Shown here piece by piece: positions 1,501 through 46,712 of a stretch of 64,000 nucleotides of DNA; positions within the stretch are counted from its first letter, which is position 1, and the number at the start of each line of letters is the position of its first letter. The stretch spans positions 1,488,001 to 1,552,000 of the forward strand of contig JBLDXI010000013.1 of NCBI GenBank assembly GCA_047495785.1. The letters run 5' to 3'. The DNA is from Lepidodermella squamata. Lineage: Eukaryota > Animalia > Gastrotricha. Made by a program: the position numbers and the translations under genes. The notes under the pieces were generated by a model that worked only from the letters and a program-made list of their open reading frames with translations, had not been told where the DNA came from and searched no databases.

Positions 1501-2808
1501 TTTATTCAAAATCAGATTAATAAATCATTTTATTATATCAAGTAAGTTTTTGCGATCGCATCAATTAATAAGCAGTGAATGAGCGCTGAGATGGAAGCAG
1601 CGACTGTAAATCTACACCTTCAGTAGCTTCGCGTACGGATGATCACGCCTACAGACACGCGACAGACGACGGGCAATTTTTTCTTCGGCTCGCTTCACCC
1701 CCACGCATCGTAATCATCCATATAATGAAACCATAAGGACGATAATATATGAAATCTCCACATATGTTTTTGTTAACTTAACTAATAAATGGCTCTCCTA
1801 GCTCGTCATATTAAATTTCTCGCATATATTTCTCATGCTAATGCTGACCAAATGATAAAGCATAGTGGATGAATTTCTCAGAGTTTATCATTTGACAAGT
1901 GTAACCGGAATGCGTTAGCGCTTCGTGTATAATATTAGGAAGCCTTAGTGGATTCTCAAATGTCGATAGGATTGTATTGATTCGAAATCGTGTTGAAAAA
2001 TAAAGCGGCATGTGATGAAGAGAAGACAAGAACTTTTTGCAAGATTTCATCAAGGAGTATCGAATATACTAAACATGCTATCGCCGTGAAGATGAGCGCT
2101 CCTACGGGTCTAATTATGGCGGTTCCTAAAACGTTGATCCCGTCTGCACTCATGATAATGCTACGATGAGTGCTGCTTCGAATGCGACTGTGACTTTATA
2201 TGCCTGTGCTTCAAGCCTCACAGTTGACATAATACTACATGTTTTGCGCACTAATATTTAAAACGCGGAGCATTTTTTCCTCGGTTGATCAGGATTCTAC
2301 TGACTCTACTGACGCAATTCATTTGCCTAGCAGCGAATCGACCAGATGGCTTATAGGCGAAGTATGATAAATATGAGCTGTATCTAAGATTACGGAAGCG
2401 AACAGGATTTTAAGCACATAAGTGTGTATTAGTGTGAATTCATAGAACTAAAACTTCATCCAGCTTCGTTTGCGCGCTGAGAAATAAATTTTTTTAATTG
2501 CGCATCCTGTGCCTTATTCTCCTTACGCTGAGCTTAACTTTCTGTAGCTGCGCATTGGCAGCCCTCAAGCGAGTTACTAATGCTCCGCTATTCAATTATT
2601 TAATACTTCTGATATTGCGAAGAATTAGGTGAAATTACCTCCCCGGATTTTGATTATGCTTCATTTTTGCGACTATATGCTTCATTTAGAAATATTTTTT
2701 CCTTATTTTTTCCTCATTCCCATTTTTATTTAGGAAACATCGACTTGTCGTTTTTCTGTTATTATTTTTCCAATAAGCTTTATCCCCAATGACCAGAAGT
2801 GACAGTAT

Positions 2809-5800
2809 ATGGGATCATCTTGCACTTGCTTGATTCGTAATCGTCCCATCGAAAGTTCTGTTCATCCGTCGTCCTATCATCAATCCGGTTATTCATCTCC
2901 AAAAAAGGCATCTGCTGCTAATCTCAAGAAGGATAAGGTAAATTCACATAACCCCCTTTCCCCGGCGCTATCAACGCCCGGGGATAATTTGTCGGCGAAG
3001 AGCAAATTAAAACCCGATCACTCGCAGGAGGAGGAATCACCGAAGAAGCAGCGACAACACCAGTTCGCTAGCAAATCGTTCGGCGATTCGCAGGACGATT
3101 CGCACGATAGCACGCAGAAGTCGAATAAGAAGGGCCGTAAGAAGATTCGACAGGAAGAACGCCAAGTCGAAGTTACCACTGTCCAGACTATCAAAGAGAC
3201 CCGTATTATTCACATCGAACACGCTGCGGATTCGGCTGGGGAGAATAACGCCGATTCAGCGCCAAATACTACAGACGACCAGCACGCTTCAACTGAACAT
3301 CAGAACGGTTCAGCTGACCCGACATCACCAGGATATAAAGTTCCACCAGGCCATCCGACTGTCATTTCTCGGGATTATTTCCCTATCAAATCGAAAACCG
3401 TCCCGGAGGAACTTGTGAAATCAGGTCTAATGAGCTTCGATAACAGGGGTTTAAATGTGAAGCATCCTTCAACTTCTACCACAGGCGAAGGAGATACGAC
3501 GTCGATAGCTAACAAGCGTAGGTTTTCAAATAAAACTAGGTCATGTAATTTAAACTCGATTTTTTACGTTCATAGATCAATCAATGGAGACGCCATACAC
3601 CCGTGACTGTGAATCGCCGGCACCGCGCTATGCGCGACATCCATCGCTCGCGACGACGAGCGTAGTTGACAGCAGCGTTACGGAAGTCGAGGTCAACAAC
3701 CCGACGGCGATGAAAGCTGCCTCGCAAAAGCTGCGAATGCTGCTCGAAGTGTTTAACAGCGGTATCAATGTTGACAAAGCGACGATTAACGATTCACTGT
3801 CCTATGCGATATCTGTCTTAGACTACAACTACCACCAAAAGAAGAAGTCTGCGTTAGTTTTATATATCCGGGTTTATATAACAGTTTTTGTTCTTTTTTT
3901 CTGAATTGCGTCTCGGCCGTTTATTGAAGCAGGCAAGCGCTCGATATGGAAGAATCTGAATCTTTCGCCGAGTCGCTCAGCCGCGCGACAAGTGTTGACA
4001 ACTTGGTGCGCGACTGGCTTGTATCTACCTTCACGCGCTCGACAAGCCGCGCCGGCGGCTATATCGATGACAAAAATGCGAACAAGAAGAACTTCAAATC
4101 TGTGGCTAATGTTATCCGCATCAGTATTATGGTCGATCGATTCCGCCGGTCGCTATATCGTATTACAATGCCAGACTATTTGAAGCCGTATTTCAAGGTG
4201 CGGTGTTTAAAAAATCCTTAATTAGAATGCAATTAGCCGAGTTTATGGGTTTTTATTACAGAAATTCTGCTATTGGGACTTTGATGTCTTCGATTTACAT
4301 CGAGCTAGCGGCGGGCACTCGCTTCGCTTTGTATGCTTCGAGGCTTTGGCCAAATTTGGCATCTGTACCCGCTTCAAGGTATAATCATAAAAATCGAGGA
4401 CTAATTAATCAATTTTTATCGATCAGATCCGCCGAACTGTTATGGAAAAATTCCTCAACCGCCTTGAAGAAGGCTATTGCCTAAATAGGAATCCATACCA
4501 CAATGTGCTCCATGGCGCCGATGTGACTCAGGGAACCGTCTTCTACTTGGCTGTCACTAATTTGATTGTAAGAAAAAAATAGGTCAAAATCTTCGATATG
4601 TCTAATTTGACATTGGTTCAATTATAGGAATGGCTGTCGGAATTGGAAATTTTCACCGTCATCATCGCATCAGCTATTCATGACTTTGAGGTATGAGTGA
4701 AAAAATTAGGTGCCGACTACGCTATAATCGATTATGATTATCCCTTTAGCACACCGGTACCACAAACAACTTCCATATCAATACGAAGTGCGTTTTATTT
4801 GGCTTCTTTGATCGGCTTGTGACGCAAATTATGATAATAATGATCCTTTTTTGTCTTAATTCCTCAGATCCGATTTGGCGCTATTCTACAACGATCGATC
4901 GGTGCTCGAGAATTACCACGTATCATCGGTTTTCCGTTTCATGAGCCAAGACCCTGAAGCCAACATATTCACGGGATTAACAGCCCAAGAATACAAGTGA
5001 GAATAGGTTAATAACGTCATCGATACCAAATTTTCACTAAATTCCAGGGAAATGCGCGCTCTGCTGATTGAAATCGTCCTCAACACTGATATGCAGTTCC
5101 ATTTTGCCCAGGTGAAAAATATGCGGACAACCCTGAGCTTGCTAGAAGCGTAAGTTGAGAGGATGAAAAAGAGTTGGAAATTGTAATAAAAAATCTTCAA
5201 CAGTGACCCGACACCTTCAGCTGTAACTATTGACAAAGCAAAGGTGCTGTCGCTGTTGGTTCACTCGTCAGACGTTGGCCATCCAGGCAGGTCATGGGCC
5301 GTTCACCTCAAGTGGACGAAAATGTTGTGCCAGGAGTTTTTCAACCAAGGCGATCGCGAGAAAGCGCTAGAGATGACCGTCTCGCCGTTGTGCGATCGAC
5401 TGACAACGAACATTGCCTCGTCTCAGATCGGCTTCATCGATTTCATCGTGAATCCAACCTTCGACGTAGTGTTGGACATGATCGAGCGAATTTTGAATCC
5501 GATGTTCCTGCAGCACAAATCGCGGTCAAGCGCAACGCTACTGCCTACGTTGGAAGAAGGCGTTGAAGGTGAGGAAGACGTAGCTCCCGCAGCGCCAATC
5601 AACAACCGCCGCGGCTCGCAAATGCCGACAGTGGAGACGGACCCCTTGGCGAACAGCGACGACTATGCAGCGCTTGTGGAAAGCGATGTCATTGGAGAAC
5701 CGCGTGATTACATACCCTTCAAATGGGACTGTACGTTTAAATTAAATTGAAATCAGCTTTGAAATTCCTGTTTTGCATTTCCAGCCCGACTGCCAGCTCT

Positions 5801-27318: not shown

Positions 27319-28498
27319 ATGGCCGTAATTTACGTAATTTTCTTCCTATCAATCGGCCAATTTGCAGTTGCAAACGGACGCGATACTGTCTACGACATGC
27401 TGGTACCTATTCTTGGCCGGCAAACCACGACTCGAAGTTCAAGTCCGGCAGTTAAAGTTTGCCGAGGAGGGGCGCATTTTGTATCTCCGACAAGGTACTC
27501 CAGGCTCAATTTTCCTAATTTGGTACTTTTCCCCGGCCTGCAAGCCAGCTGTTCCGGTTTCATCTTCGAATGGCTTTTCGTTCCTGGAAATTGGAACTTA
27601 AGCACCGTTTATTTGGCCGTATTTCGCAAGCGGCCAGATTTGTTCCTAGGCTACCAAATAGTCGGAGCTAATGTTATACCAGCCGATTATCTAGCAGTTG
27701 TTGACGAGTGGAATCAATGGATGGTACCTGAGGAGATGAGAATCTACGTTGAACCAGGCGATTTTCTCGGCTATTTCTACGAAAAACCGCCGAATTCGCT
27801 ATTAACAGGCGGGTACCGGCGGTTTAGGTCGCCTTTAAATCTGGCAACGCCAATAGAGGAGGAGAAACGAGACGCTGATTACCTAATGTTAACCGCTGAT
27901 TTCACAATCGAAGAATTTATGGAACTTATCGCAAAGCCCGGTCGTTATATCAGCTTCAACAGGGAAATCAGACCACCGCAAGTTTATGCCATGCCGCCGA
28001 TTCGATTTTCAATTTTAAGCACAGTCGATCCTCCTACTCGTCGGACTTACCCATTGCCAGAGTTTACTTTGCCAACTTCAGTGCAAAGGTCTACGACGCG
28101 ACCTGGTTAGTTAAACATGCACCGAAACAACGCTGTTATGATAATTATTTTTCGCAGGTTCTAGAACCAGCCCGAGACCCGCGCCGATGAATTCAAGCCT
28201 AGCTGAGCAACAAGATTTACAGGATCCTTTAAATCGATGCATGCGAGACCAGTTGTTGAACAGCTCTTATACAGAGCCTGGCTGTCTCGATGACAAAGTG
28301 TTGCGATATTATTTTTCGAGGCAAATGAAAACATGTGTATTCTATTACTTGACCGTATGCGTTGCGATTCCCGGTAAGATTTCTCGGCCGATTGTTACCG
28401 GCAACAGTTTCGACACTCCGCAGCAATGCGAAGAAATATGCCGCGACTTGATCAATCCTAGACTCAAGCCTATTACACCTCCTCCTCTTGATTTTTAA
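27319..28498 (+). CDS. Secreted protein with the same architecture, atypical Kunitz domain (paralog B)
   Basis: Exons 27319-28105 and 28158-28498 (375 aa). Shares FP.L...C.G.I..W.F.P, YLAV, RI.V..GD..GYFY, PPIR and IPGK...PI.TGN.FD with paralog A, and has a phase-1 intron in the same linker. Confidence 0.8.
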
Positions 28499-28792
28499 TA
28501 CGCATTTTTGAAGATAAAGCAATAAAACAAACGGTCGTCAGATGACCTTATAGGTGTAATTGCTCTATAATCTTACAACGGCATCTAGGCTAATAATATT
28601 TATAACGCACACGCGTGACCTAGTGCCCCAACATGGCCAGCAAGCAATTTCGTTGATGAATTTAGGAAATCATCACGATAAAGATCTGTAATTTTTGAAA
28701 ATCTCGAAAAATGATTGCTCAACTAAGAGCTAATTTTTATTAAAATCATTGCTGATGAAATATAAAAAATATTCACACAATTTCAACGTTAT

Positions 28793-31700
28793 TCACACAT
28801 CCCTGCAGGATGGCTTATCAAATAAGCAAGGAGTAGTGTCTGCGCCCAGTTGTCGCAACTGACGAACAACGCTGAAACGTTTACCAAGGGACGCGTATTG
28901 TATTGGTGTAGGCCCGTTCCTGTCATCTCGCGCATCCACTATTGCTTTTAAAGCGGCACCATTATCGCCGGAGCGATTTTCTAGTTGTTTAAGCAGCGCC
29001 GTTGCAGCGTCTCTGCCATCAGGACGCCCAGAGATAACTACGTCCGGCCGATAGCCACTCACCGCAATAATCAGAGGCGTGAGGCCATACGAGTATCGGT
29101 CGTTCATCAGGCGGAGAATGACTCGCCAAGGTTGACCTTCAAGCAACGCTGTCACAGTGTCGCCGTCATCGCGGGCGGCAGCCAACATGAGGGCAGTCAT
29201 GTTGTTGCGACGGTCTCGCAATTGCAAGTTAACGCCACCCTCTCGCAGCATGCGAACTACGCTGGTTTGGCTATTGTTAACTGCCAGCATTAGCGCAGAC
29301 ATGCCGTCTTTATCGACTAGGTCCGGCTGTTCCAACTCATCGCGTAGGGTTCGAGCTATTTCCAGGTAACCGGCCTTGGCAGCTATCATAAGAGCCGTAG
29401 TACCGTTCTCATCACGCTGGTTGATGCCAGGATTCTTACTATTGAGAACGACCTGAAATAATCACAAAAAACGATTTATATGATAATACCAGTTTATAGG
29501 GTAAATTATTTCTTGTCAGAAATCCTTGGATCTAGCTATCCACAATTTGCGCAACCATTTGGAATTTCGGAATTTTTTTTATGAATTCAAACTCATTTTT
29601 TAAATTAAGGCCACTAAGGGAATCTTCCATCTTTTATCCACGATTTTACCGAAATAAATAAAAAATTTACCGGAGAAAGCCTAAAAACTCCGATGGTAAC
29701 TGGTTCGATTTTTACGCGGTTGGATCAAATTTCTTCCGATTTTTTTTCAATCCCATTCACAAGAAACGTATTTTTTTTACTATTCTTATGGCATTTTACA
29801 GATTTTTGCCATGAGATATGACTTCTCCTGTCATTTTAGAGGTTCTGACCCCTTTTTCGTGTATTTCCTTTGCTTGCGTTACTTATAGGACACGTCCACG
29901 GAACCTAAATTATAGCCGGAGTGATTTGGGAAAATTTAGGCAAAATCAAGCGCATCAACATCAGATTGCCATTATTAACCTATGTGGAATAAAATCAATT
30001 TTAGCTTCTCCTTAGTCACCCAACCAGAGTGCTCGAGTGGTTTAAGAGGTCAGACTTAAGATCTGATGGGAGTAATCCCGCGTGGGTTCGAACCCCACCT
30101 CTGGTAACACATTTTTTTCTAAAATTGAGTTTAAAGTTATTTCTTTTAACCTGAAGGGCTGATAAGCTATCAATTTCAGCTGCCGCCATCAGCGGGGTAC
30201 GGCCTGCATTCGTTTTCGCGCTTGGATTGGCACCCAATGCCAGCAAGGCCGAAGCCGTCTGAGTTTGCCCGGCTCGAATTGCGAGATAAAAGGCCGTCCG
30301 GCCAGCAGCATCGCGATCTTCGACTATTGCACCATTATTGCTCGTTAAATTCAACACTAGGGAAGTTGCGCCGTTTAATGCCGCAATCATGAGAGCGGTC
30401 GAATTGTCCTCTGATCGCGCATCAACAGCGGCTCCTTTGCCAATCAGCAAATCGCATACCGCCGCGTTATCTCTTGAAGCCGCCGAGAAAAGCGGCGTCT
30501 CGCCTCTAAAATCCCTGGCATTAACATCAGCACCAGCTGTAATTAACACCAGAGTTTTTTCACTCGAATTCGACGCATGAAACAGAGCTGAGCGTCCCTT
30601 CGAATCGCGAGCGTCCAACGACGGGGAGTGATTAAGAAGCAGTCGTAAGACATTCGCACTGTTACTTGACCTAGATGCCCACATTAACGGGGTCATGCCG
30701 TTCTCATCAAATGTATCAACATCAGCCCCGGCTTCTAACAATTTCGCAGCCGATATATCTGCATTACTCGCAGAACTATTAGCGACACGCATCAGTGCAC
30801 TGATATTCCGGCTATCGACAGCATTAACGTCCGCACCGGCTTTGATAAGCTGATCGACTAGGTCTGGAGAATTTGAGTCTGCCGCCCTAATTATCGGCGA
30901 TTCTTCTTTCCGATTTTTCGAATTAACGTCGACGCCGTTGCTAAGCAACACCTTGACAACGCTTTTCGAGACCGAGGCATTTCTCAGGGCGACCAAGAGG
31001 GCTGTCTCGCCGCTGAAATCGGAAGCTTCAATGTCCGCGCCTGCGTCGATCAAACAGCTCGCTGTTTCAGCAAGACCGAACTTGGCCGAGTATATCAAAG
31101 GCGTCCAACCGTAACGGTCCCTCGCGTCTATAGTTGCGCCGCGATCGATAAGCAGCGTAGCGACTTGAGCTTGTTTAACGTCATTCTGACCGCGAGCGGC
31201 ATGAATCAGCGGCGTCGCACCGTCGTGATCTTCTGCGTCTATTTCGGCGCTTGAATTCAGCAGAAGAGAAACTGCATCTCGAAGCCCGAACCTCGCTGCT
31301 AGATGGAGAGGCGTTAGTTCCGTGTTTAACGTTACCTCATTGACAGAGGCGCCTTTTTCAATCAATGCCTATAAAATATCATTTCGGAAATGTTTGACGC
31401 TGGGAAAAATTTGTCTCACTTTCAATATTCCAAGTTTCGGCTTGCCGGCCGAAATGATTGACAGCACAATTCCGCGACCAGCTTTGCTACGCTTCGTTGC
31501 ATTGGCGCCGCGTTCCAGAAGCAATCGAACTACATTTTCGTGGCCAAACGCAGCGGCTAGCATCAACGGCGTCGTTCCTTCGCCATCAGGGCCGTCGACA
31601 GCGGCGCCCATATCTAGTAGCTTCCTTGTTATATTCATTTCCTCGCCATAAGTGCTCACAGCGGCGATCAAAGGCGTCGTGCCAGGGTATACTTTCGTAT

Positions 31701-34700
31701 CAGGCGAGTTGGGATTAGCCCCGTTTGAGAGAAGCAACATTGTGCAGTTGTAATGGCGATTGACGATCGCAGCTATAAGGGCATGTTGGAGCAATTTAGC
31801 CCCTTTCCTGAGAAGCTGAGCAACTATTTCATCGAAACCCCGAGCAGCCGCGTCATGTAGAGCTGAAGCGCCAAATTTACTGGCGAAATCGACAGTGGCT
31901 TTGTTCTTTTCCAGGAGATAATCAACCACTGAAGCATCCCCGAATCGAGCTGCTGCTATCAAAGCTGTAACGCCATTAACATCTTGCGCTGTGTAATCGG
32001 TTCGGCTGAAAAATCATCAGGAAAATACATGTTGAAAAGCTCAAGATATAAAAGAGGCAAATGTAGCTCTTTCAGATTTACGGATTTTGGGAATATTCGA
32101 AAATGATGACCCGCTGAGAAACGTATTTTTACCATTAAATCCCAGAATGTTTTATCTTTTATTTTTATTTCCCTAGACACGTGTTATTTCGGTAGAGAAA
32201 ATATTGGGAAGAATATTTTTATCACTTGAGGCTTGAGGTTACAAAGGCCACACCCGAGCGGTCATCTCGAGAACGGTGATAGCTAGGAAGCCGCTCTCAA
32301 AGAAAAAGTTCGCCAGCGTGATGAGATCGACCTACTACCTAGAAATGCATTCAGTTGGATCAAAGGTGATACTTCGTGCATAATCGATTTTAATGACACT
32401 ATACTATATAGTGCAGTTTGGTGACAGTCCCAAAAGCGGTCCTAGATGCCCTGGGGTTGTAGTCACCCTACAGGATTTTTTGAATATAGAATCGTAGGAA
32501 ATAGGAAGAGATGCCGTTGGGATCTAATGAGAAAGAGAATCAAATGACAGGGAAAATATGATCTAGACGTGTAGCCAGGTGAACTTCGGAGAAGCCGAAG
32601 CCTTTACTTCAGTAAAGTTAGATTTTTCCCAATTTTCCGCGTGGAAAAACGTTACGAACATCCTTGGGAAATGTAATTTTCGAATAATATGAAAAGTGGT
32701 GTTTGGGCGAATTGTTAGTATTTTCCAGTAAATCGCAAAAATGCACTGCCTTGAAGAAGAGCGACTTATCACATGAAGTGACTAAAAAACTAACCCTGCT
32801 TCGGCCAGAACCGAAATTGCGCCCCGACCGATACCGGATTCTACCGCGCGAATTAGAGGAGTGGCTCTTCGTTCTGTATCACGAGCGTTTACGTTAGCGC
32901 CACCGTCAAGCAGCCGCGCCATTATCCATATGTTGCCATTAGCAACAGCCACCATTAACGGCGTCTGTCCGAGATTATCCGGGGCGTCAACAGGGGCTGC
33001 AGCTCTTAGTAACAACCTCGCAATCGTCTGTTTGCTTTCTTCCAGCGATGGATCACGGTTAGCTGCCAACAACCATAGAGCAGAATGAGCCTGATCGTCT
33101 CGAGTCGCAACATCTATTCCAGACTGGACGAGAAATTGCACCAGGTAGTAGTCACCGGCTTCGGCGGCGTAGTGCAGAGCTGAACGCCCGTGAATATCTA
33201 CAAACTCCATATGCCGCTTCCATTGCGCATCAAACGATATTGACTTGATGAATTTTGCGACAGTTACGTTTCTTGTACTTCGGCATAGATGGATCATTGC
33301 TGACGTCCTATCTTCATCAACCAGCTGCTCATCAGCGGACAAGTCGTATAACAGTTTAATAATTTCAGTATTGTTCGCATCTATCGCCCAGCGCAAAGGC
33401 GTTTGTTGCCGCCAGCATTTGATATTAGGCCCTACATAGGCTTGAAGCATAATTTTCAAGCACGATGCACAGTTTGAGGCAATAGCCAATGACATGGCGC
33501 GGCCTTTACACTGATCAGTGGCGTCGAACGCTCCCGATAGTGTATTAACTAGTCGCAAATTTCCAGCGAGAGCGGCTAGCTCCAACGGTTGCAGTGATGA
33601 GTCATTCCAGCCCAGGGTAACATTGGCACCAGCATCAAGTAAAAATCTAGCTACGTCCTGTCGTGAAGTAGTGTTATCACAGCTGAATAACGCCACTACT
33701 TGCAGGCAAGTTGCACCATCGACCACCGATGCGTTGTTCTTACAAACTCCCTCATTAGTGTAAGGGCGGTCGTCGCGCCAATTAGGGTCGTACATCTCCG
33801 AGGAGGCCTTGATTTTTTCAATCATTATCCTGACTTTAGTAATGTTCGAGACTTTGCAAGCGTCCAACAATTCGTGGTATAAATCGAGTTGGGTGCAGCG
33901 ACCTGGCTCCGTCCAAGATCCGTTGTTTTTCTCGATGCAGGTGATATTACTAGGATAGAGCGGGTGGAGGTTGAAGCCGGGATCACACTGCAAAGTTCGG
34001 ACTTTGGAGCCTGGGGCAAAATAGCCGTGGCTAACTCGAGGAACGGGCCCGCATTCGAATTCAGGTTTAGCCGTAGTCGTTGTTGAAGTAGTCGGTGGGG
34101 CTTTTGTGGTCACCTTGGTTCGACGCGATGTAGGCAGGGTGGTTGTTACCTCGCTTGAATAACGAGCTATCGTTTGGTTAATCCACCTCATTGCCGAGCA
34201 AACTCTAGCGTAGACGCCTGGCTGGTTGCCATAACCGCACGCTGTGCCGTAGGATACAACCCCGACGACGTGGCTTCGATTGCCAGCTCGGCACATCAAG
34301 GGCGATCCGCTGTCACCGCGGCACGTGTCCAGACCCGGCTGGGTAGAGCCGGCGCAGAGTTGAGCCGTACTCACGTTGCGGTACCCGCTCAACTGCTGGC
34401 ACAGGTCGCGTGAATACGCGGCTAATTGAACTTTTTTCAGGCCTTTCGAAATCGCCTGACCGCTAGGCGTGAATCCCCAACCGCTAGCCGTGAACTCTAG
34501 GCAACCGTCTGACTTCGGATTCGTCCGCTGCTCGTCGGTTTCAGCGTCGCAGTGGAGTAGCCCCGTTGAAGGAAGGCAAATGGGCCGAACATAATCCTCA
34601 TAGAACATTTTATATGTCAACTTGACGAGAGCCAAGTCGTATTGATAAGTTTTATCTGAACTATTGTATTGGGGGTGAATGAAGTAAGTTGATGTCGTAG

Positions 34701-35368
34701 TTTTCTGCTCGTGCCTCTCCTCCTCAGGGGCCGACAAATTTGTTCGCCCTAATACAATGTTAATCCTAAATAAATGAGAATAAGCAAAACAAAAATAGGG
34801 AATTTTTTCGTTACCTACGCGACAAGTTTTGTAGATGAAACTAGGCAATGAGCTGCCGTTAGAAGCCACTCCTTTCCTATAACGCTAGCCCCACATGGTC
34901 GGTAGTTGGAAGCAGCTTCAAATTGCATTTCCAATTTAGCCATCCAAGGAATCTGTCCTTCGTACGCGTATTCCGTGTCGAAATTTCCAAGGGAAGAGGG
35001 ACGTATTTTAGAAACCTCGCCACATTGATTCATCTCGACTAAATCAAAATAAACTTGTGTTAAAAAATGTGATAGGTTTTATACGTACAGTTTTGTGTCT
35101 GGCAGCGGCCTATAGGTGGATCGAATCGACCCTGATCGTTGTTGTCTATTGTGCAAAGACTTCGAGCAACCGTTCCTGATGGAATCATATACCCGGAGTG
35201 ACAAGTGAGAATGACTGATACGCCGCCGTTGACTGAGCTGCCCTCCGGCAACGTCGTTCCATTATGAAGACGCAGCCAGCCTTTGGAAATTGCTGGTACT
35301 AGACACCCTGCTGAAGTTAGGCGGGCATTTATCAATACTAAAGACGCGATCAACAGTTGGCTAATCAT
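28793..35368 (-). CDS. Secreted mosaic protease: signal peptide, Sushi/CCP, trypsin-like S1 protease, Thr-rich linker, Sushi/CCP, ~30 ankyrin repeats (6 exons, ~1,644 aa)
   Basis: Exons 35368-35089, 35038-34819, 34765-32795, 32005-31420, 31368-30151 and 29452-28793 join in frame (4,935 nt). Triad LTAAHC / YDLALVKL / DTCRGDSGSP. Many G.TPL..AA..G....V..LL..GA.V repeats. Protease and first ankyrin repeats lie in one uninterrupted exon. Confidence 0.88.
30023..30106 (+). tRNA. tRNA-Leu-TAA: tRNA-Leu (anticodon TAA), intronic and antisense to the protease-ankyrin gene
   Basis: ACCAGAG/CTCTGGT acceptor stem, D-loop AGTGGTTTA, anticodon stem TCAGA-CTTAAGA-TCTGA, long variable arm, GGTTCGAACCCC T-arm, discriminator A, and a T7 Pol III terminator just downstream. 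Confidence 0.95.
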
Positions 35369-45033: not shown

Positions 45034-46712
45034 ATGCGCCACCGATCGTTGATCAAAGTAATAGTAAAGCTACTACTATTCGCATCGGTTTCAGGTAAGC
45101 TAGCTGAAAGAAGCCTTCATTCACGATCTTAACTTTTTTCCAAACTAGCCCAAGTAGCCCAGCCAGCTCCTCGAAGTAAGAATCTCGCTCCTGATTTGTA
45201 GCAGGGTGAATGAAGTTTGAATTTTTCCTAGGTGGTTATTGGGACGTTTGCGGACCTTCGAACTTGTACTCGACCGATTACCAAATATGTTGCGGCGATA
45301 AAATTTACCAAAACCTACGAGGCGACATCGACTGCTGTAGTGGTGTGGCTTACAATAGGACAGTCAACTATTGCTTCAACAATAATGTATTGACTTTTCG
45401 GCCAGTTTCAAGATATGTGTTCAAATCGAGTTTTTATTTAGGAAATTCGTCCTGTTATGTCGAGCTTACCGCAGCCGAACCCGGCTCCATCCGTTTTCTT
45501 TGGCTCTTTGCCCGTTCAGCAAAGAGCCCCAGCCCCGGCTGTGAGCCCAGTCGTTGTTAGTCCTGTGATCAGTTCGGTCCCAGTTGTTAACCCTGTAGTC
45601 AATCCTGTTATTAACCCATCGCAAATGATGCCAAGCGTGTCGAATGTCCTCACAGTTCCAGTTTCAGCTCCCGCACCCGCAGGAGGAGTTAACACTAAGC
45701 CTCAGTCTGGCTACCGATGTGGTTCGGCTGTTCTTGACGCTAACGTCGCGACTACCAAGACGACCCTATGCTGCGGTAATGTCGCGTTCGACGCGAGGTA
45801 CCAATTATGCTCCGACTTTGGCCCAGCCCCGATTCAAGCCGCTGGCATCCAGGGCGCGTTGACTGTCTCATCGCCCGAGAAGTACTACACCTGCGGCTTG
45901 GACCAAGTGCCGTCGAGTGCAGTTACGTCCTACGACACGGCGTTCTGCTGCGGCACTGTTGTTTACGACAGCCGATTTTACACATGCACCCGCAACAACG
46001 CCGTAGTTCCGCAAGTGCCTTTCAGCCAAGTGCCAGGCGTTCAAGTACAACCGCAGCCGCAACAACAACAACAACTGCCGCCCGTCGACAATCGCCCGCG
46101 CCCGTCCGCCTACCCGCCAGTTAGCGACGGCTTCACGCGCGTCCGCTGCCTGTCAAACTTGTTCGATGTCCCGACAAATCACATGACTTACTACTCGTGC
46201 TGCGGCTCGCAAGCTTTCGATGAACGGTACTTTGTCTGCACGTCAACGGGCACTGGATCGCCAAGGGCCCAACCTATCAACAATCAAGTGCCACAGCCAC
46301 AGCCTCAACCCCAGCCACAACCAATGCCCCAACCGCCACCTCAGCCTCAACCTCTTCGTAAGTCTTAAGAGGGACATTCTCACTTTTGGATCATTGCCAA
46401 TTTTAGGAATTTATTACCGTGGGAATTTCTGAAAAAAAATTAATTATACCCAGCTTGGATAACGGTCAGAATGTTGTGGGTGTAATGTGTTTTCTTTTGT
46501 TAATTACAGCTAGCGATCCTATCCAGCCTCAACCATCGGCGCCACGAACATCGACACAGCTGCAGTGTGGAAAGCGCATCTACTTGTTCGGCCCACCCAC
46601 CTACGGTACGTACATGCAATGCTGCGGCGAAGACGTGTTCGACGTGCGCTCCGACACCTGCATAGGCACGACGAAAATTACAGGCGGCGCTCAAACCGGC
46701 AAGAAGAAATGA
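45034..46712 (+). CDS. Galaxin-like secreted Cys-Cys repeat protein with Pro/Gln/Val-rich linkers
   Basis: Signal-like first exon MRHRSLIKVIVKLLLFASVS. Repeated C-G-x(n)-CCG-xx-(Y/F)D-x-R-xxx-C modules separated by PQPQ/PVV linkers; several short introns. Confidence 0.75.

What the first reader, a model, noticed from the sequence alone, without database searches (positions are those of the whole stretch)
28793..35368. Secreted trypsin-like protease fused to ~30 apparently extracellular ankyrin repeats
Seen: signal peptide, Sushi, intact His/Asp/Ser protease with S1 Asp, Thr linker, Sushi, then ~1,180 aa of ankyrin repeats, with no visible transmembrane helix between them. The protease-ankyrin junction is inside one exon, so it is not a gene-merging artefact. 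The ankyrin part has many N-x-S/T sequons (NIT, NAS, NTT, NVT, NDS, NNT, NCT, NAT, NSS, NHS, NST, NLT, NMT). Known: ankyrin repeats are almost always cytosolic, with spider latrotoxins a notable secreted exception, and Sushi+S1 proteases (factor B/C2, MASP, Limulus factor C) act in recognition cascades. Inference: an extracellular recognition-plus-proteolysis protein (immune sensor, toxin or matrix-targeted enzyme) with an architecture I do not recognise.
Basis: partly seen in the sequence, partly recalled or inferred. Interest (0 to 1): 0.9.

Follow-up and report, generated by a model that had tools for sequence, protein, structure and literature searches.

The report
Secreted protease fused to ankyrin array
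An animal gene encodes a protein with an export signal, a trypsin-type protease between two complement-type (Sushi) modules, and about 30 ankyrin repeats with no membrane anchor, so a binding scaffold that normally works inside cells should end up outside the cell.

Summary
A six-exon minus-strand gene (35368-28793, all introns GT-AG) encodes 1,644 aa. In order: signal-like N-terminus, Sushi-like module, S1 protease (His/Asp/Ser and S1 Asp present), Thr-rich linker, Sushi, then an ankyrin solenoid starting 3 residues after the last Sushi cysteine. There is no transmembrane-grade hydrophobic stretch. The protease-ankyrin junction lies inside one exon.

Four further full-length, collinear paralogs exist in the same genome (35-84% identity). 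All regions except the 32-codon linker have dN/dS below 1, so this is a real, selected gene family.

New points:
- This copy and its closest paralog lack the canonical K/R|I-x-G-G activation site that the other three keep.
- Seven cysteines in the first ankyrin repeats, a C-terminal cysteine pair and five N-x-S/T sites in the ankyrin part are invariant across paralogs, which fits an oxidising, glycosylating compartment.

No protein with this architecture appeared in large protein searches or in the literature. Only loose trypsin+ankyrin analogues were found. Transcript evidence is inconclusive and function is inferred. The scan had already noted similar trypsin-CCP-ankyrin fusions elsewhere in this genome.

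The parts
35309..35368 (-). Start codon and predicted signal peptide (aa 1-20; hydrophobic core, T-S-A before the predicted cut, 1 residue before the first Sushi Cys)
   Evidence: Highest KD19 window of the protein is 1.77. All four paralogs start with Met plus a hydrophobic core and a small-x-Ala site just before the first Cys, while the sequence upstream of their Met differs (L013). Translation verified. No SignalP was available.
35102..35305 (-). Sushi/CCP-like module 1 (aa 22-89, four invariant Cys; the consensus Trp is Phe in this copy)
   Evidence: Pfam Sushi 13.9 bits, below the 20.7 cut-off. The five-paralog profile hits only CCP chains in the PDB, best factor H at E 1.1e-6.
35039..35088 (-). 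Intron 1 (50 nt, GT-AG)
   Evidence: Among GT-donor sites, only this donor keeps the frame open; paired with the acceptor after a T-rich tract.
34974..34988 (-). Position of the zymogen activation site; it reads G-N-F-D-T where paralogs read K-I-S-G-G, so the canonical site is absent
   Evidence: The Pfam Trypsin match starts at profile position 6 here and at position 1 in L014 and L018. Alignment; coordinates.
34168..34985 (-). S1 (trypsin-fold) protease domain, aa 112-366, interrupted by intron 2 (34766-34818). His157 is at 34848-34850, Asp210 at 34636-34638, S1 Asp313 at 34327-34329 and Ser319 at 34309-34311. Twelve Cys fit the six canonical S1 disulfides, including the interchain Cys99-Cys230 equivalent.
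   Evidence: Pfam Trypsin 36.2 and 118 bits. Best solved relatives are enteropeptidase, plasma kallikrein and factor XI. All Cys are invariant in the paralogs. dN/dS 0.14 against L013.
34057..34161 (-). Thr/Pro-rich mucin-like linker (aa 369-403) with a dibasic RR kept in all five paralogs
   Evidence: Sequence and alignment. dN/dS about 1.2 on only 32 codons.
33895..34053 (-). Sushi/CCP module 2 (aa 405-457)
   Evidence: Pfam PF00084 27.5 bits, E 4.2e-6, above the cut-off. dN/dS 0.19.
33196..33891 (-). Cysteine-rich, degenerate N-terminal ankyrin repeats ('cap', aa 459-690), beginning 3 residues after the last Sushi Cys. Seven Cys are invariant in the five paralogs (470, 508, 520, 529, 599, 602, 617). 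The sequon at N666 is invariant.
   Evidence: The AF2 model is helical-repeat from aa 459 at pLDDT about 75-90. Foldseek top hits are all ankyrin or DARPin structures. Alignment A1 and conservation table. Sushi 2 plus cap is found in exactly five loci of the genome.
28832..33192 (-). Main ankyrin array, aa 692-1632: 27 repeats across exons 3-6, interrupted by introns 3 (32006-32794), 4 (31369-31419) and 5 (29453-30150)
   Evidence: Pfam Ank, Ank_2, Ank_4 and related models on every exon. Repeat HMM (the weakest of the 27, at aa 1374-1403, scores E 0.23). dN/dS 0.24-0.53. Sequons at N1057, N1207, N1341 and N1441 are kept in all paralogs.
28805..28828 (-). C-terminal Cys-x6-Cys pair (aa 1634-1641), invariant as a Cys pair in all paralogs
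28736..28795 (-). Stop codon (28793-28795) and AATAAA polyadenylation-type signal (28736-28741)

Best explanation
This is a genuine, selectively maintained gene of a lineage-specific five-member family. It encodes an ER-routed, most likely secreted, mosaic serine protease.

Architecture. The order is signal peptide, CCP-like module, trypsin-fold protease with Arg/Lys (Asp189-type) specificity, O-glycosylation-type Thr-rich linker, CCP, and a roughly 1,190-aa ankyrin solenoid. There is no membrane anchor, and the ankyrins start three residues after a disulfide-bonded CCP. The array must therefore be lumenal or extracellular.

Adaptation of the ankyrin array. Its first repeats carry family-invariant cysteines. 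The C-terminus carries an invariant Cys pair. Several N-x-S/T sites are invariant. All of this fits a scaffold adapted to the secretory pathway.

Proposed mechanism (inferred). The ankyrin solenoid binds an extracellular partner or surface and so positions or concentrates the protease. The CCP modules act as rigid spacers, as they do in complement and clotting proteases.

This copy in particular. It and its nearest paralog lack the K/R|I-x-G-G site, so they cannot be switched on by the usual N-terminal insertion. The triad, the S1 pocket and strong purifying selection are all kept. The likeliest reading is non-canonical, partner- or cofactor-dependent activity, as in complement factor B/C2 or single-chain tPA.

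Status of each step. Architecture, paralogy and selection are shown. Secretion is inferred from sequence. Binding-coupled proteolysis is a hypothesis.
For: - Gene model with five GT-AG introns giving 1,644 aa and a poly(A) signal after the stop.
- Trypsin and Ank in one ORF. The same holds in L013, L014 and L018; in L016 they lie in adjacent collinear ORFs.
- dN/dS: 0.14 for the protease, 0.19 for Sushi 2 and 0.24-0.53 for the ankyrin parts. The L014/L018 pair gives similar values. dS of about 0.35-0.45 shows true paralogs, not haplotigs.
- No TM-grade hydrophobic segment in any member.
- Signal-like N-termini with small-x-Ala sites in all members.
- Twelve protease Cys, the Sushi Cys, seven cap Cys and the C-terminal Cys pair are invariant. 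Five ankyrin-part sequons are invariant.
- The ankyrin fold from aa 459 is confirmed by AF2 and Foldseek.
- Sushi 2 passes Pfam. The Sushi 1 profile hits only CCP proteins.
- The activation motif is present in three paralogs and absent here.
Against: - There is no transcript evidence. The two public runs holding the locus are contigs. One is clearly DNA. The other (possibly RNA) gives only short fragments and no splice joints.
- The signal peptide and the absence of a TM helix rest on hydropathy and the -3/-1 rule, not on a trained predictor.
- Disulfide pairing in the ankyrin cap could not be checked, because the model gives no coordinates. This copy has an odd number of cap cysteines (nine).
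- Sequon density is not specific to this protein.
- Without an activation site the domain may be catalytically silent.
- No ligand, substrate or expression site is known.
Confidence: 0.6

Rival explanations
1. Pseudo-protease or locked zymogen. This copy and L013 are secreted binding or scaffold proteins. Their S1 domain no longer cuts and serves as a binding module, as in haptoglobin, HGF or protein Z. The ankyrin array does the main job.
For: - The canonical activation site and the Ile16 equivalent are absent: G-NFDT against K-ISGG in three paralogs.
- GDSGGP has become GDSGSP in these two copies.
Against: - His, Asp, Ser, Asp189, Gly216 and Gly226 equivalents are all retained.
- The protease domain has the lowest dN/dS of the gene, 0.14. 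The loss of the site predates the window/L013 split, because both share it.
- Known pseudo-proteases usually lose triad residues (established knowledge).
Confidence: 0.2
2. Offensive or digestive secretion. The protein is a venom, mucus or gut-lumen component. The ankyrin array acts on or inside target cells, by analogy with latrotoxin or with effector ankyrins of parasites, rather than as a self-directed recognition module.
For: - It belongs to a small multigene family, and further protease-ankyrin layouts were noted in the same genome.
- A Kunitz-like ORF lies just downstream.
- The literature knows extracellularly acting ankyrin proteins mainly as toxins or effectors.
Against: - No latrotoxin-type or pore-forming domain was found by Pfam.
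- The Kunitz neighbour is not kept beside the paralogs.
- The organism's biology and the expression site are unknown.
- Groove positions of the repeats are conserved rather than diversifying.
Confidence: 0.13
3. Annotation or assembly artefact, or a silent gene. The protease and ankyrin parts would be separately expressed, or the locus would be an untranscribed relic.
For: - No RNA run on record holds the locus, and no splice joints were seen.
- No identical or close protein exists in a 1.84-billion-protein representative library.
Against: - The junction lies inside a 695-aa ORF.
- The same collinear layout occurs at five loci on four contigs, at 35-84% identity, each with intact long ORFs.
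- dN/dS is below 1 along the whole length except the 32-codon linker.
- An independent DNA run covers the junction in single contigs (records 12-14).
Confidence: 0.05

Closest known systems
Complement and clotting-type mosaic S1 proteases with CCP modules next to the catalytic domain (C1r/C1s/MASP, factor B/C2, Limulus factor C, haptoglobin)
   Same: - Signal peptide and a CCP immediately N-terminal to a trypsin-fold domain.
- A Cys before the catalytic domain at the position of the interchain disulfide.
- Asp189-type specificity.
- A recognition part joined to a protease.
- Factor B/C2 also work without classical N-terminal insertion.
   Different: - Pfam found no CUB, EGF, vWA, LCCL or lectin modules.
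- A second CCP follows the protease.
- A roughly 30-repeat ankyrin array replaces any known recognition module.
- The nearest solved sequences are enteropeptidase, kallikrein and factor XI, not MASP or C1r.
Alpha-latrotoxin and related spider latrotoxins
   Same: A large protein that acts outside the producing cell and carries about 20 ankyrin repeats. It is the textbook example of extracellularly acting ankyrins, and the only paper found for the phrase 'extracellular ankyrin'.
   Different: - Latrotoxins have no protease or CCP modules.
- By established knowledge they lack a classical signal peptide.
- No latrotoxin-specific domain is detected here.
- No sequence relationship beyond generic ankyrin repeats was seen.
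Other predicted trypsin+ankyrin proteins: P0160 (CLIP-like, trypsin, Thr-rich linker, 3 or so ankyrins; Logan contig of run ERR1740140) and an ESM Atlas cluster of 53 bacterial Trypsin+Ank proteins of about 478 aa
   Same: - A trypsin-fold domain followed by ankyrin repeats in one polypeptide.
- P0160 also has a secretory-type N-terminal module and a Thr-rich linker before the ankyrins.
   Different: - Neither has CCP modules.
- They carry only a few repeats.
- Identity in the protease part is about 31%.
- They lack the Cys-rich cap.
- The Atlas match scores 0.88 on features only and is a lead, not shown homology.
- Both are uncharacterised.
Polyserases, TMPRSS9 and enteropeptidase-type proteases
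   Same: They give the best sequence scores for the catalytic domain.
   Different: They are membrane-anchored or multi-protease proteins without ankyrin repeats. None of the 25 protease hits among the top 150 representatives has an ankyrin match.

Membership tests
S1A (chymotrypsin-fold) serine peptidases, Pfam PF00089 | Significant match to the Trypsin profile | tested here: met
   36.2 bits (exon 2) and 118 bits (exon 3) against a cut-off of 20.6.
S1A (chymotrypsin-fold) serine peptidases, Pfam PF00089 | Catalytic His57/Asp102/Ser195 in the TAAHC, D-[LI]-A-L and GDSG contexts | tested here: met
   H157, D210 and S319, conserved in all paralogs.
S1A (chymotrypsin-fold) serine peptidases, Pfam PF00089 | Zymogen activation site (R/K followed by I-V-G-G-like new N-terminus) | tested here: not met
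   G-NFDT in this copy and in L013, K-ISGG in L014, L018 and L016. The Pfam match starts at profile position 6 here and at position 1 in L014 and L018.
S1A (chymotrypsin-fold) serine peptidases, Pfam PF00089 | Trypsin-like S1 pocket (Asp189, Gly216, Gly226) | tested here: met
   D313 lies six residues before S319. The S-Y-G and P-G-V-Y motifs are in place.
Sushi/CCP/SCR domain, Pfam PF00084 | Profile match above cut-off with four Cys and the consensus Trp (module 2) | tested here: met
   27.5 bits against 20.7, E 4.2e-6.
Sushi/CCP/SCR domain, Pfam PF00084 | Profile match above cut-off (module 1) | tested here: inconclusive
   13.9 bits, below the cut-off, and not reported in the paralogs. The family profile hits 16 PDB sequences, all CCP proteins, best E 1.1e-6.
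Ankyrin repeat proteins, Pfam clan Ank | Tandem 33-residue helix-turn-helix repeats matching the Ank profiles and forming a solenoid | tested here: met
   Ank_2 scores up to 241 bits per exon. 27 repeats by HMM from aa 692 to 1632. AF2 and Foldseek match ankyrin-1, DARPins and RNase L. Unusual point: Met or Ile usually replaces the His of T-P-L-H.
Secreted (non-membrane) secretory-pathway protein | Cleavable N-terminal signal peptide | tested here: inconclusive
   Hydrophobic core with KD19 of 1.77 and a T-S-A site; the same pattern occurs in all paralogs. No trained predictor was available.
Secreted (non-membrane) secretory-pathway protein | No transmembrane helix and no hydrophobic C-terminal GPI signal | tested here: met
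   The maximum KD19 after the signal is 1.45. The best paralog segments contain charged residues. The C-terminus is polar.
Complement-type CCP-SP proteases (C1r/C1s/MASP, factor B/C2, factor C) | Family-specific N-terminal modules (CUB-EGF-CUB, CCPx3-vWA, or EGF/LCCL/lectin) | tested here: not met
   Pfam finds only Sushi, Trypsin and Ank. The best PDB sequence relatives are enteropeptidase, kallikrein and factor XI.
Latrotoxins | N-terminal latrotoxin wing/body domains preceding the ankyrins | tested here: not met
   The N-terminal 457 aa are Sushi, S1 and Sushi. Pfam gives no latrotoxin-type match.

The most novel reading that the evidence does not exclude
In this animal, ankyrin solenoids have been recruited as a secreted, disulfide-stapled and N-glycosylated extracellular binding scaffold. 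They are wired directly to serine proteases through CCP spacers. The five-member Sushi-S1-Sushi-ankyrin family and the other trypsin-CCP-ankyrin layouts of the genome would together form a previously unknown extracellular recognition-and-proteolysis system. That would be an ankyrin-based counterpart of lectin/MASP or LRR-based systems. Members such as this one would be activated by partner binding rather than by zymogen cleavage.
Probability: 0.25. Interest if true: 0.85.

Novelty: new variant of a known kind. Interest (0 to 1): 0.62.

Why it matters
Ankyrin repeats are among the commonest protein-binding scaffolds, but in animals they are treated as cytosolic or nuclear. A conserved gene family that sends about 30 of them through the secretory pathway, attached to a protease, would matter in three ways.

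1. It would show that nature uses ankyrin solenoids outside the cell. This parallels engineered DARPins, which tolerate secretion.
2. It would give a new type of targeting module for mosaic proteases of the complement and clotting kind.
3. It would offer natural sequence solutions (cysteine staples, glycosylated beta-turn tips, Met/Ile in place of the T-P-L-H histidine) for stabilising such scaffolds extracellularly.

The contrast between paralogs with and without an activation site also gives a ready-made test of non-canonical S1 protease activation.

Tried and rejected
- RNA support. X2 behaves as DNA, because its contigs cover the introns. X1 is only guessed to be RNA. It gives pieces of about 60-90 nt and no joints. 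Its non-repeat intron bins are near zero and most exon bins are 2-7, which is suggestive only. I draw no conclusion on expression.
- Sequon density as evidence for secretion: rejected as non-discriminating. The ankyrin part has z 4.8 over shuffles. A control of 15 other ankyrin ORFs of the same genome averages an observed/expected ratio of 2.2, and six of them have z above 4.
- Diversifying selection on the canonical ankyrin groove positions: not seen. dN/dS is 0.38 there against 0.27 for framework positions. Changes between this gene and L013 concentrate on the outer helix.
- Orthologues elsewhere. HMMER against 1.84 billion representatives gave no top-150 protein with both domains and none above 40% identity. 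A word-indexed search of 5.8 billion proteins gave a single trypsin+ankyrin protein, P0160. JGI metagenome contigs gave no relative of the Sushi 2 plus cap region. The Atlas gave only generic ankyrin clusters plus one bacterial Trypsin+Ank cluster. Length limits (361-1,148 aa) mean that full-length relatives could not be seen there.
- Literature. Five text searches found no description of secreted animal protease-ankyrin fusions.
- Wider census of protease-ankyrin genes in the genome.
- Kunitz neighbour as a conserved partner: rejected, since it is absent beside the paralogs.
- Disulfide geometry in the cap: not testable, because the structure tool returns no coordinates.
Full report
**1. What is there**

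The region carries a minus-strand gene. I enumerated every GT-AG pair that keeps the frame open. I then chose sites by consensus and by ankyrin-repeat continuity.

- Exons are 35368-35089, 35038-34819, 34765-32795, 32005-31420, 31368-30151 and 29452-28793.
- Introns are 50, 53, 789, 51 and 698 nt.
- The CDS is 4,935 nt, giving 1,644 aa.
- An AATAAA sits 52 nt after the stop on the same strand.

Pfam finds Trypsin and five Ank-clan models inside the same uninterrupted 695-aa ORF, and Ank models on every later exon.

**2. Domain by domain**

- **N-terminus.** Residues 1-20 form the most hydrophobic 19-residue window of the protein (Kyte-Doolittle 1.77). They end in T-S-A, one residue before the first cysteine.
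- **Module 1 (aa 22-89).** It has four cysteines at Sushi spacing but reaches only 13.9 bits with Pfam Sushi, below the 20.7 cut-off. A profile of the five paralogous modules (alignment A2) hits 16 PDB sequences. All are CCP proteins, and the best is complement factor H at E 1.1e-6. I accept it as a divergent CCP.
- **Protease.** It has H157, D210, S319 and the S1 D313 (coordinates verified). Its 12 cysteines fit the six classical S1 disulfides, including the pro-region-to-Cys122 link. All are invariant among the paralogs. The nearest solved sequences are enteropeptidase, plasma kallikrein and factor XI.
- **Linker.** A Thr/Pro-rich linker follows (aa 369-403). A dibasic RR in it is kept in all paralogs.
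- **Sushi 2 (aa 405-457).** It passes Pfam at 27.5 bits.
- **Ankyrin part.** Helices of ankyrin type start three residues after the last Sushi cysteine. An AlphaFold2 model of aa 400-760, built on the five-paralog alignment, is helical-repeat from aa 459 at pLDDT about 75-90. The Sushi part of that model is poorly resolved. All top Foldseek matches are ankyrin structures: DARPins, ankyrin-1, RNase L and EHMT1. A repeat HMM built from the protein's own clear repeats finds 27 repeats between aa 692 and 1632, the weakest at E 0.23. With the roughly 230-aa degenerate cap this gives about 30 repeats.

**3. No membrane anchor**

Outside the N-terminus the highest KD19 value is 1.45. In the paralogs the highest segments (up to 1.81) contain Asp and Lys and are ordinary ankyrin helices. 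The C-terminus is polar. Neither is met, as far as hydropathy can tell. A trained predictor was not available.

**4. It is a conserved family, not an accident**

The protease-to-Sushi 2 part recovers four further loci in the same 121-Mb assembly. tblastn of the whole model shows that each is collinear over aa 1/7 to 1641-1644.

| Locus | Position | Identity to this gene |
|---|---|---|
| L013 | C32, about 4.01 Mb | 69-84% |
| L014 | C17, about 2.153 Mb | about 33-41% |
| L018 | C17, about 2.189 Mb | about 32-42% |
| L016 | C59, about 0.104 Mb | 35-52% |

- In L013, L014 and L018 the protease and ankyrins again share a single ORF. In L016 they lie in adjacent collinear ORFs.
- The Sushi 2 plus cap segment is found in exactly these five loci.
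- Nei-Gojobori dN/dS between this gene and L013 (dS about 0.35-0.45) is 0.14 for the protease and 0.19 for Sushi 2. It is 0.47-0.53 for the cap and first repeats, and 0.24-0.27 for the later ankyrin exons. The L014/L018 pair gives 0.17 to 0.51.

Both halves are therefore under purifying selection, and the copies are real paralogs. This disposes of the gene-merging, assembly-artefact and pseudogene readings at the DNA level.

**5. Evidence for an extracellular ankyrin array**

The strongest argument is topological. Two CCP modules and a six-disulfide S1 domain are secretory-pathway folds. The ankyrins are fused directly to the second CCP with no hydrophobic segment between them.

The family alignment adds three observations.

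- Seven cysteines in the cap are invariant across all five paralogs, despite about 35-40% identity there. These are 470, 508, 520, 529, 599, 602 and 617.
- A Cys pair at the very C-terminus is invariant.
- Five sequons in the ankyrin part are invariant: N666, N1057, N1207, N1341 and N1441. Two more are kept in four of five members. Several of them arise because Asn replaces the usual Gly two residues before the framework Thr, at the exposed beta-turn.

They do exceed composition-matched shuffles, 22 against 8.9 (z 4.8). Fifteen other long ankyrin ORFs of this genome show the same tendency: the observed/expected ratio is 2.2 and six have z above 4. Density alone is therefore not evidence.

**6.

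Paralogs L014, L018 and L016 read K-I-S-G-G at the activation position. There the Pfam Trypsin match starts at profile position 1 in L014 and L018. This gene and L013 read G-N-F-D-T, and the Pfam match starts at position 6. No basic P1 residue and no Ile16-type N-terminus can be produced. GDSGGP has also become GDSGSP.

The triad, Asp189 and the Gly216/Gly226 equivalents are kept, and the domain is the most constrained part of the gene (dN/dS 0.14). I therefore favour a non-canonical, partner-dependent activation mode. Analogies are factor B/C2 and single-chain tPA (established knowledge). A pure pseudo-protease seems less likely, but that rival stays at about 0.2.

**7. Is the array a variable receptor?**

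I mapped each residue to its repeat position. The canonical groove positions (the DARPin-randomised ones) have dN/dS 0.38 between this gene and L013, against 0.27 for the framework. Most replacements lie on the outer helix. There is no sign of diversifying selection on the binding groove. The data fit a conserved ligand better than an arms-race receptor.

**8. Relatives elsewhere and prior knowledge**

- HMMER of exon 3 against 1.84 billion representatives found no protein above 40% identity. Among the top 150 there were 25 protease hits (polyserases and similar) and 125 ankyrin hits, but none with both domains.
- The word-indexed search of 5.8 billion proteins gave one protein with both domains, P0160. 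Its layout is a CLIP-like module, trypsin with an IVNG start, a Thr-rich linker and about 3 ankyrins. It comes from a 1.5-kb Logan contig of run ERR1740140, and I did not check what kind of library that run is.
- The ESM Atlas holds a cluster of 53 bacterial Trypsin+Ank proteins. The match is on features only (0.88) and is a lead.
- JGI metagenome contigs hold no relative of the family-specific region.
- Text searches found no description of such animal proteins. The phrase 'extracellular ankyrin' occurs in one paper, on latrotoxin.
- PMC8195603 discusses ankyrins as sensor repeats attached to effectors in intracellular immune proteins. It is a conceptual parallel only.

**9. Transcription**

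This remains unresolved. Only two runs hold the locus, and both are kept as contigs. X2 covers the introns and is DNA. X1, only guessed to be RNA, holds 14-20% of the words in short pieces. It shows almost nothing on non-repeat intron bins, but it shows no joints either.

**10. Context within the scan**

Earlier notes of this scan describe several trypsin-CCP-ankyrin fusions on other pieces of this genome. One has the same title-level architecture and is probably one of the paralogs found here. I did not rely on those notes.

My own searches show the five-member family. They also show at least one further protease-plus-ankyrin open frame, at C7 about 4.583 Mb.

**11. Verdict**

The architecture is real, conserved and apparently undescribed. 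Secretion is strongly implied by sequence but untested. The functional reading, an ankyrin-targeted extracellular protease, is a reasoned hypothesis. I class it as a new variant of a known kind (mosaic secreted S1 protease with an unprecedented partner module), with interest 0.62.

Noticed in passing
window 30023-30106 (+), inside intron 5 of the gene: ARAGORN calls a tRNA-Leu(TAA) gene antisense to the protease gene. In the DNA run X2 the surrounding bins (29620-30219) reach a depth of 1,700-3,300 against about 90 on the exons. It is therefore part of a high-copy element, either a tRNA gene family or a tRNA-derived SINE.
   Followed up: partly
window 32220-32619 (intron 3): A second high-copy repeat. 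X2 depth is 1,600-5,400, with many rearranged joints.
   Followed up: no
window 27319-28498 (+): Convergent neighbour ending 295 nt from the protease gene's stop. It comprises a 263-aa ORF with a signal-like N-terminus and no Pfam match, followed by an ORF with a marginal Kunitz/BPTI match (20.6 bits against a cut-off of 21). It has its own AATAAA at 28521. It is not present beside the paralogs.
   Followed up: partly
window 45457-46368 (+): A 303-aa ORF with Galaxin-like repeats (PF24748, 34.9 bits). It is Cys-rich with a Pro/Gln-rich tail.
   Followed up: no
   Followed up: no
L014 203-1387 and 7628-8816 (G000:C17 about 2.1507-2.1593 Mb): The paralog on C17 is flanked by 1.19-kb direct repeats that are 97.8% identical. 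The same ORF pair lies beside the inverted copy L018. This may be the boundary of a transposon or of a segmental duplication.
   Followed up: partly
G000:C7:4581598-4583844 (+): A further locus where a trypsin C-terminal part and an ankyrin-cap-like stretch fall in one 582-aa open frame. This would be another protease-ankyrin layout, outside the five-member family.
   Followed up: no
G000 genome-wide; loci L021/L035, L036, L044/L048: The 121-Mb genome gives more than 6,000 first-look Ank_2 candidates. Some other long ankyrin ORFs are also rich in sequons and cysteines, for example 37 Cys and 20 sequons in 1,066 aa. They may be further secretory-pathway ankyrin proteins.
   Followed up: no
L049 (Logan contig ERR1740140_130798), gene 57-1475: A complete 472-aa ORF from another sample. 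Its layout is a CLIP-like Cys module, trypsin with an IVNG start, a Thr-rich linker and about 3 ankyrin repeats. It is an independent example of a secretory-type protease fused to ankyrins.
   Followed up: partly
window 28832-33192 (-), repeat consensus: In this protein's repeats the His of the T-P-L-H motif is usually Met or Ile, and His occurs in only 3 of 21 aligned repeats. Cys911, Cys1124 and Cys1324 replace Ile or Leu only in this copy and L013.
   Followed up: partly
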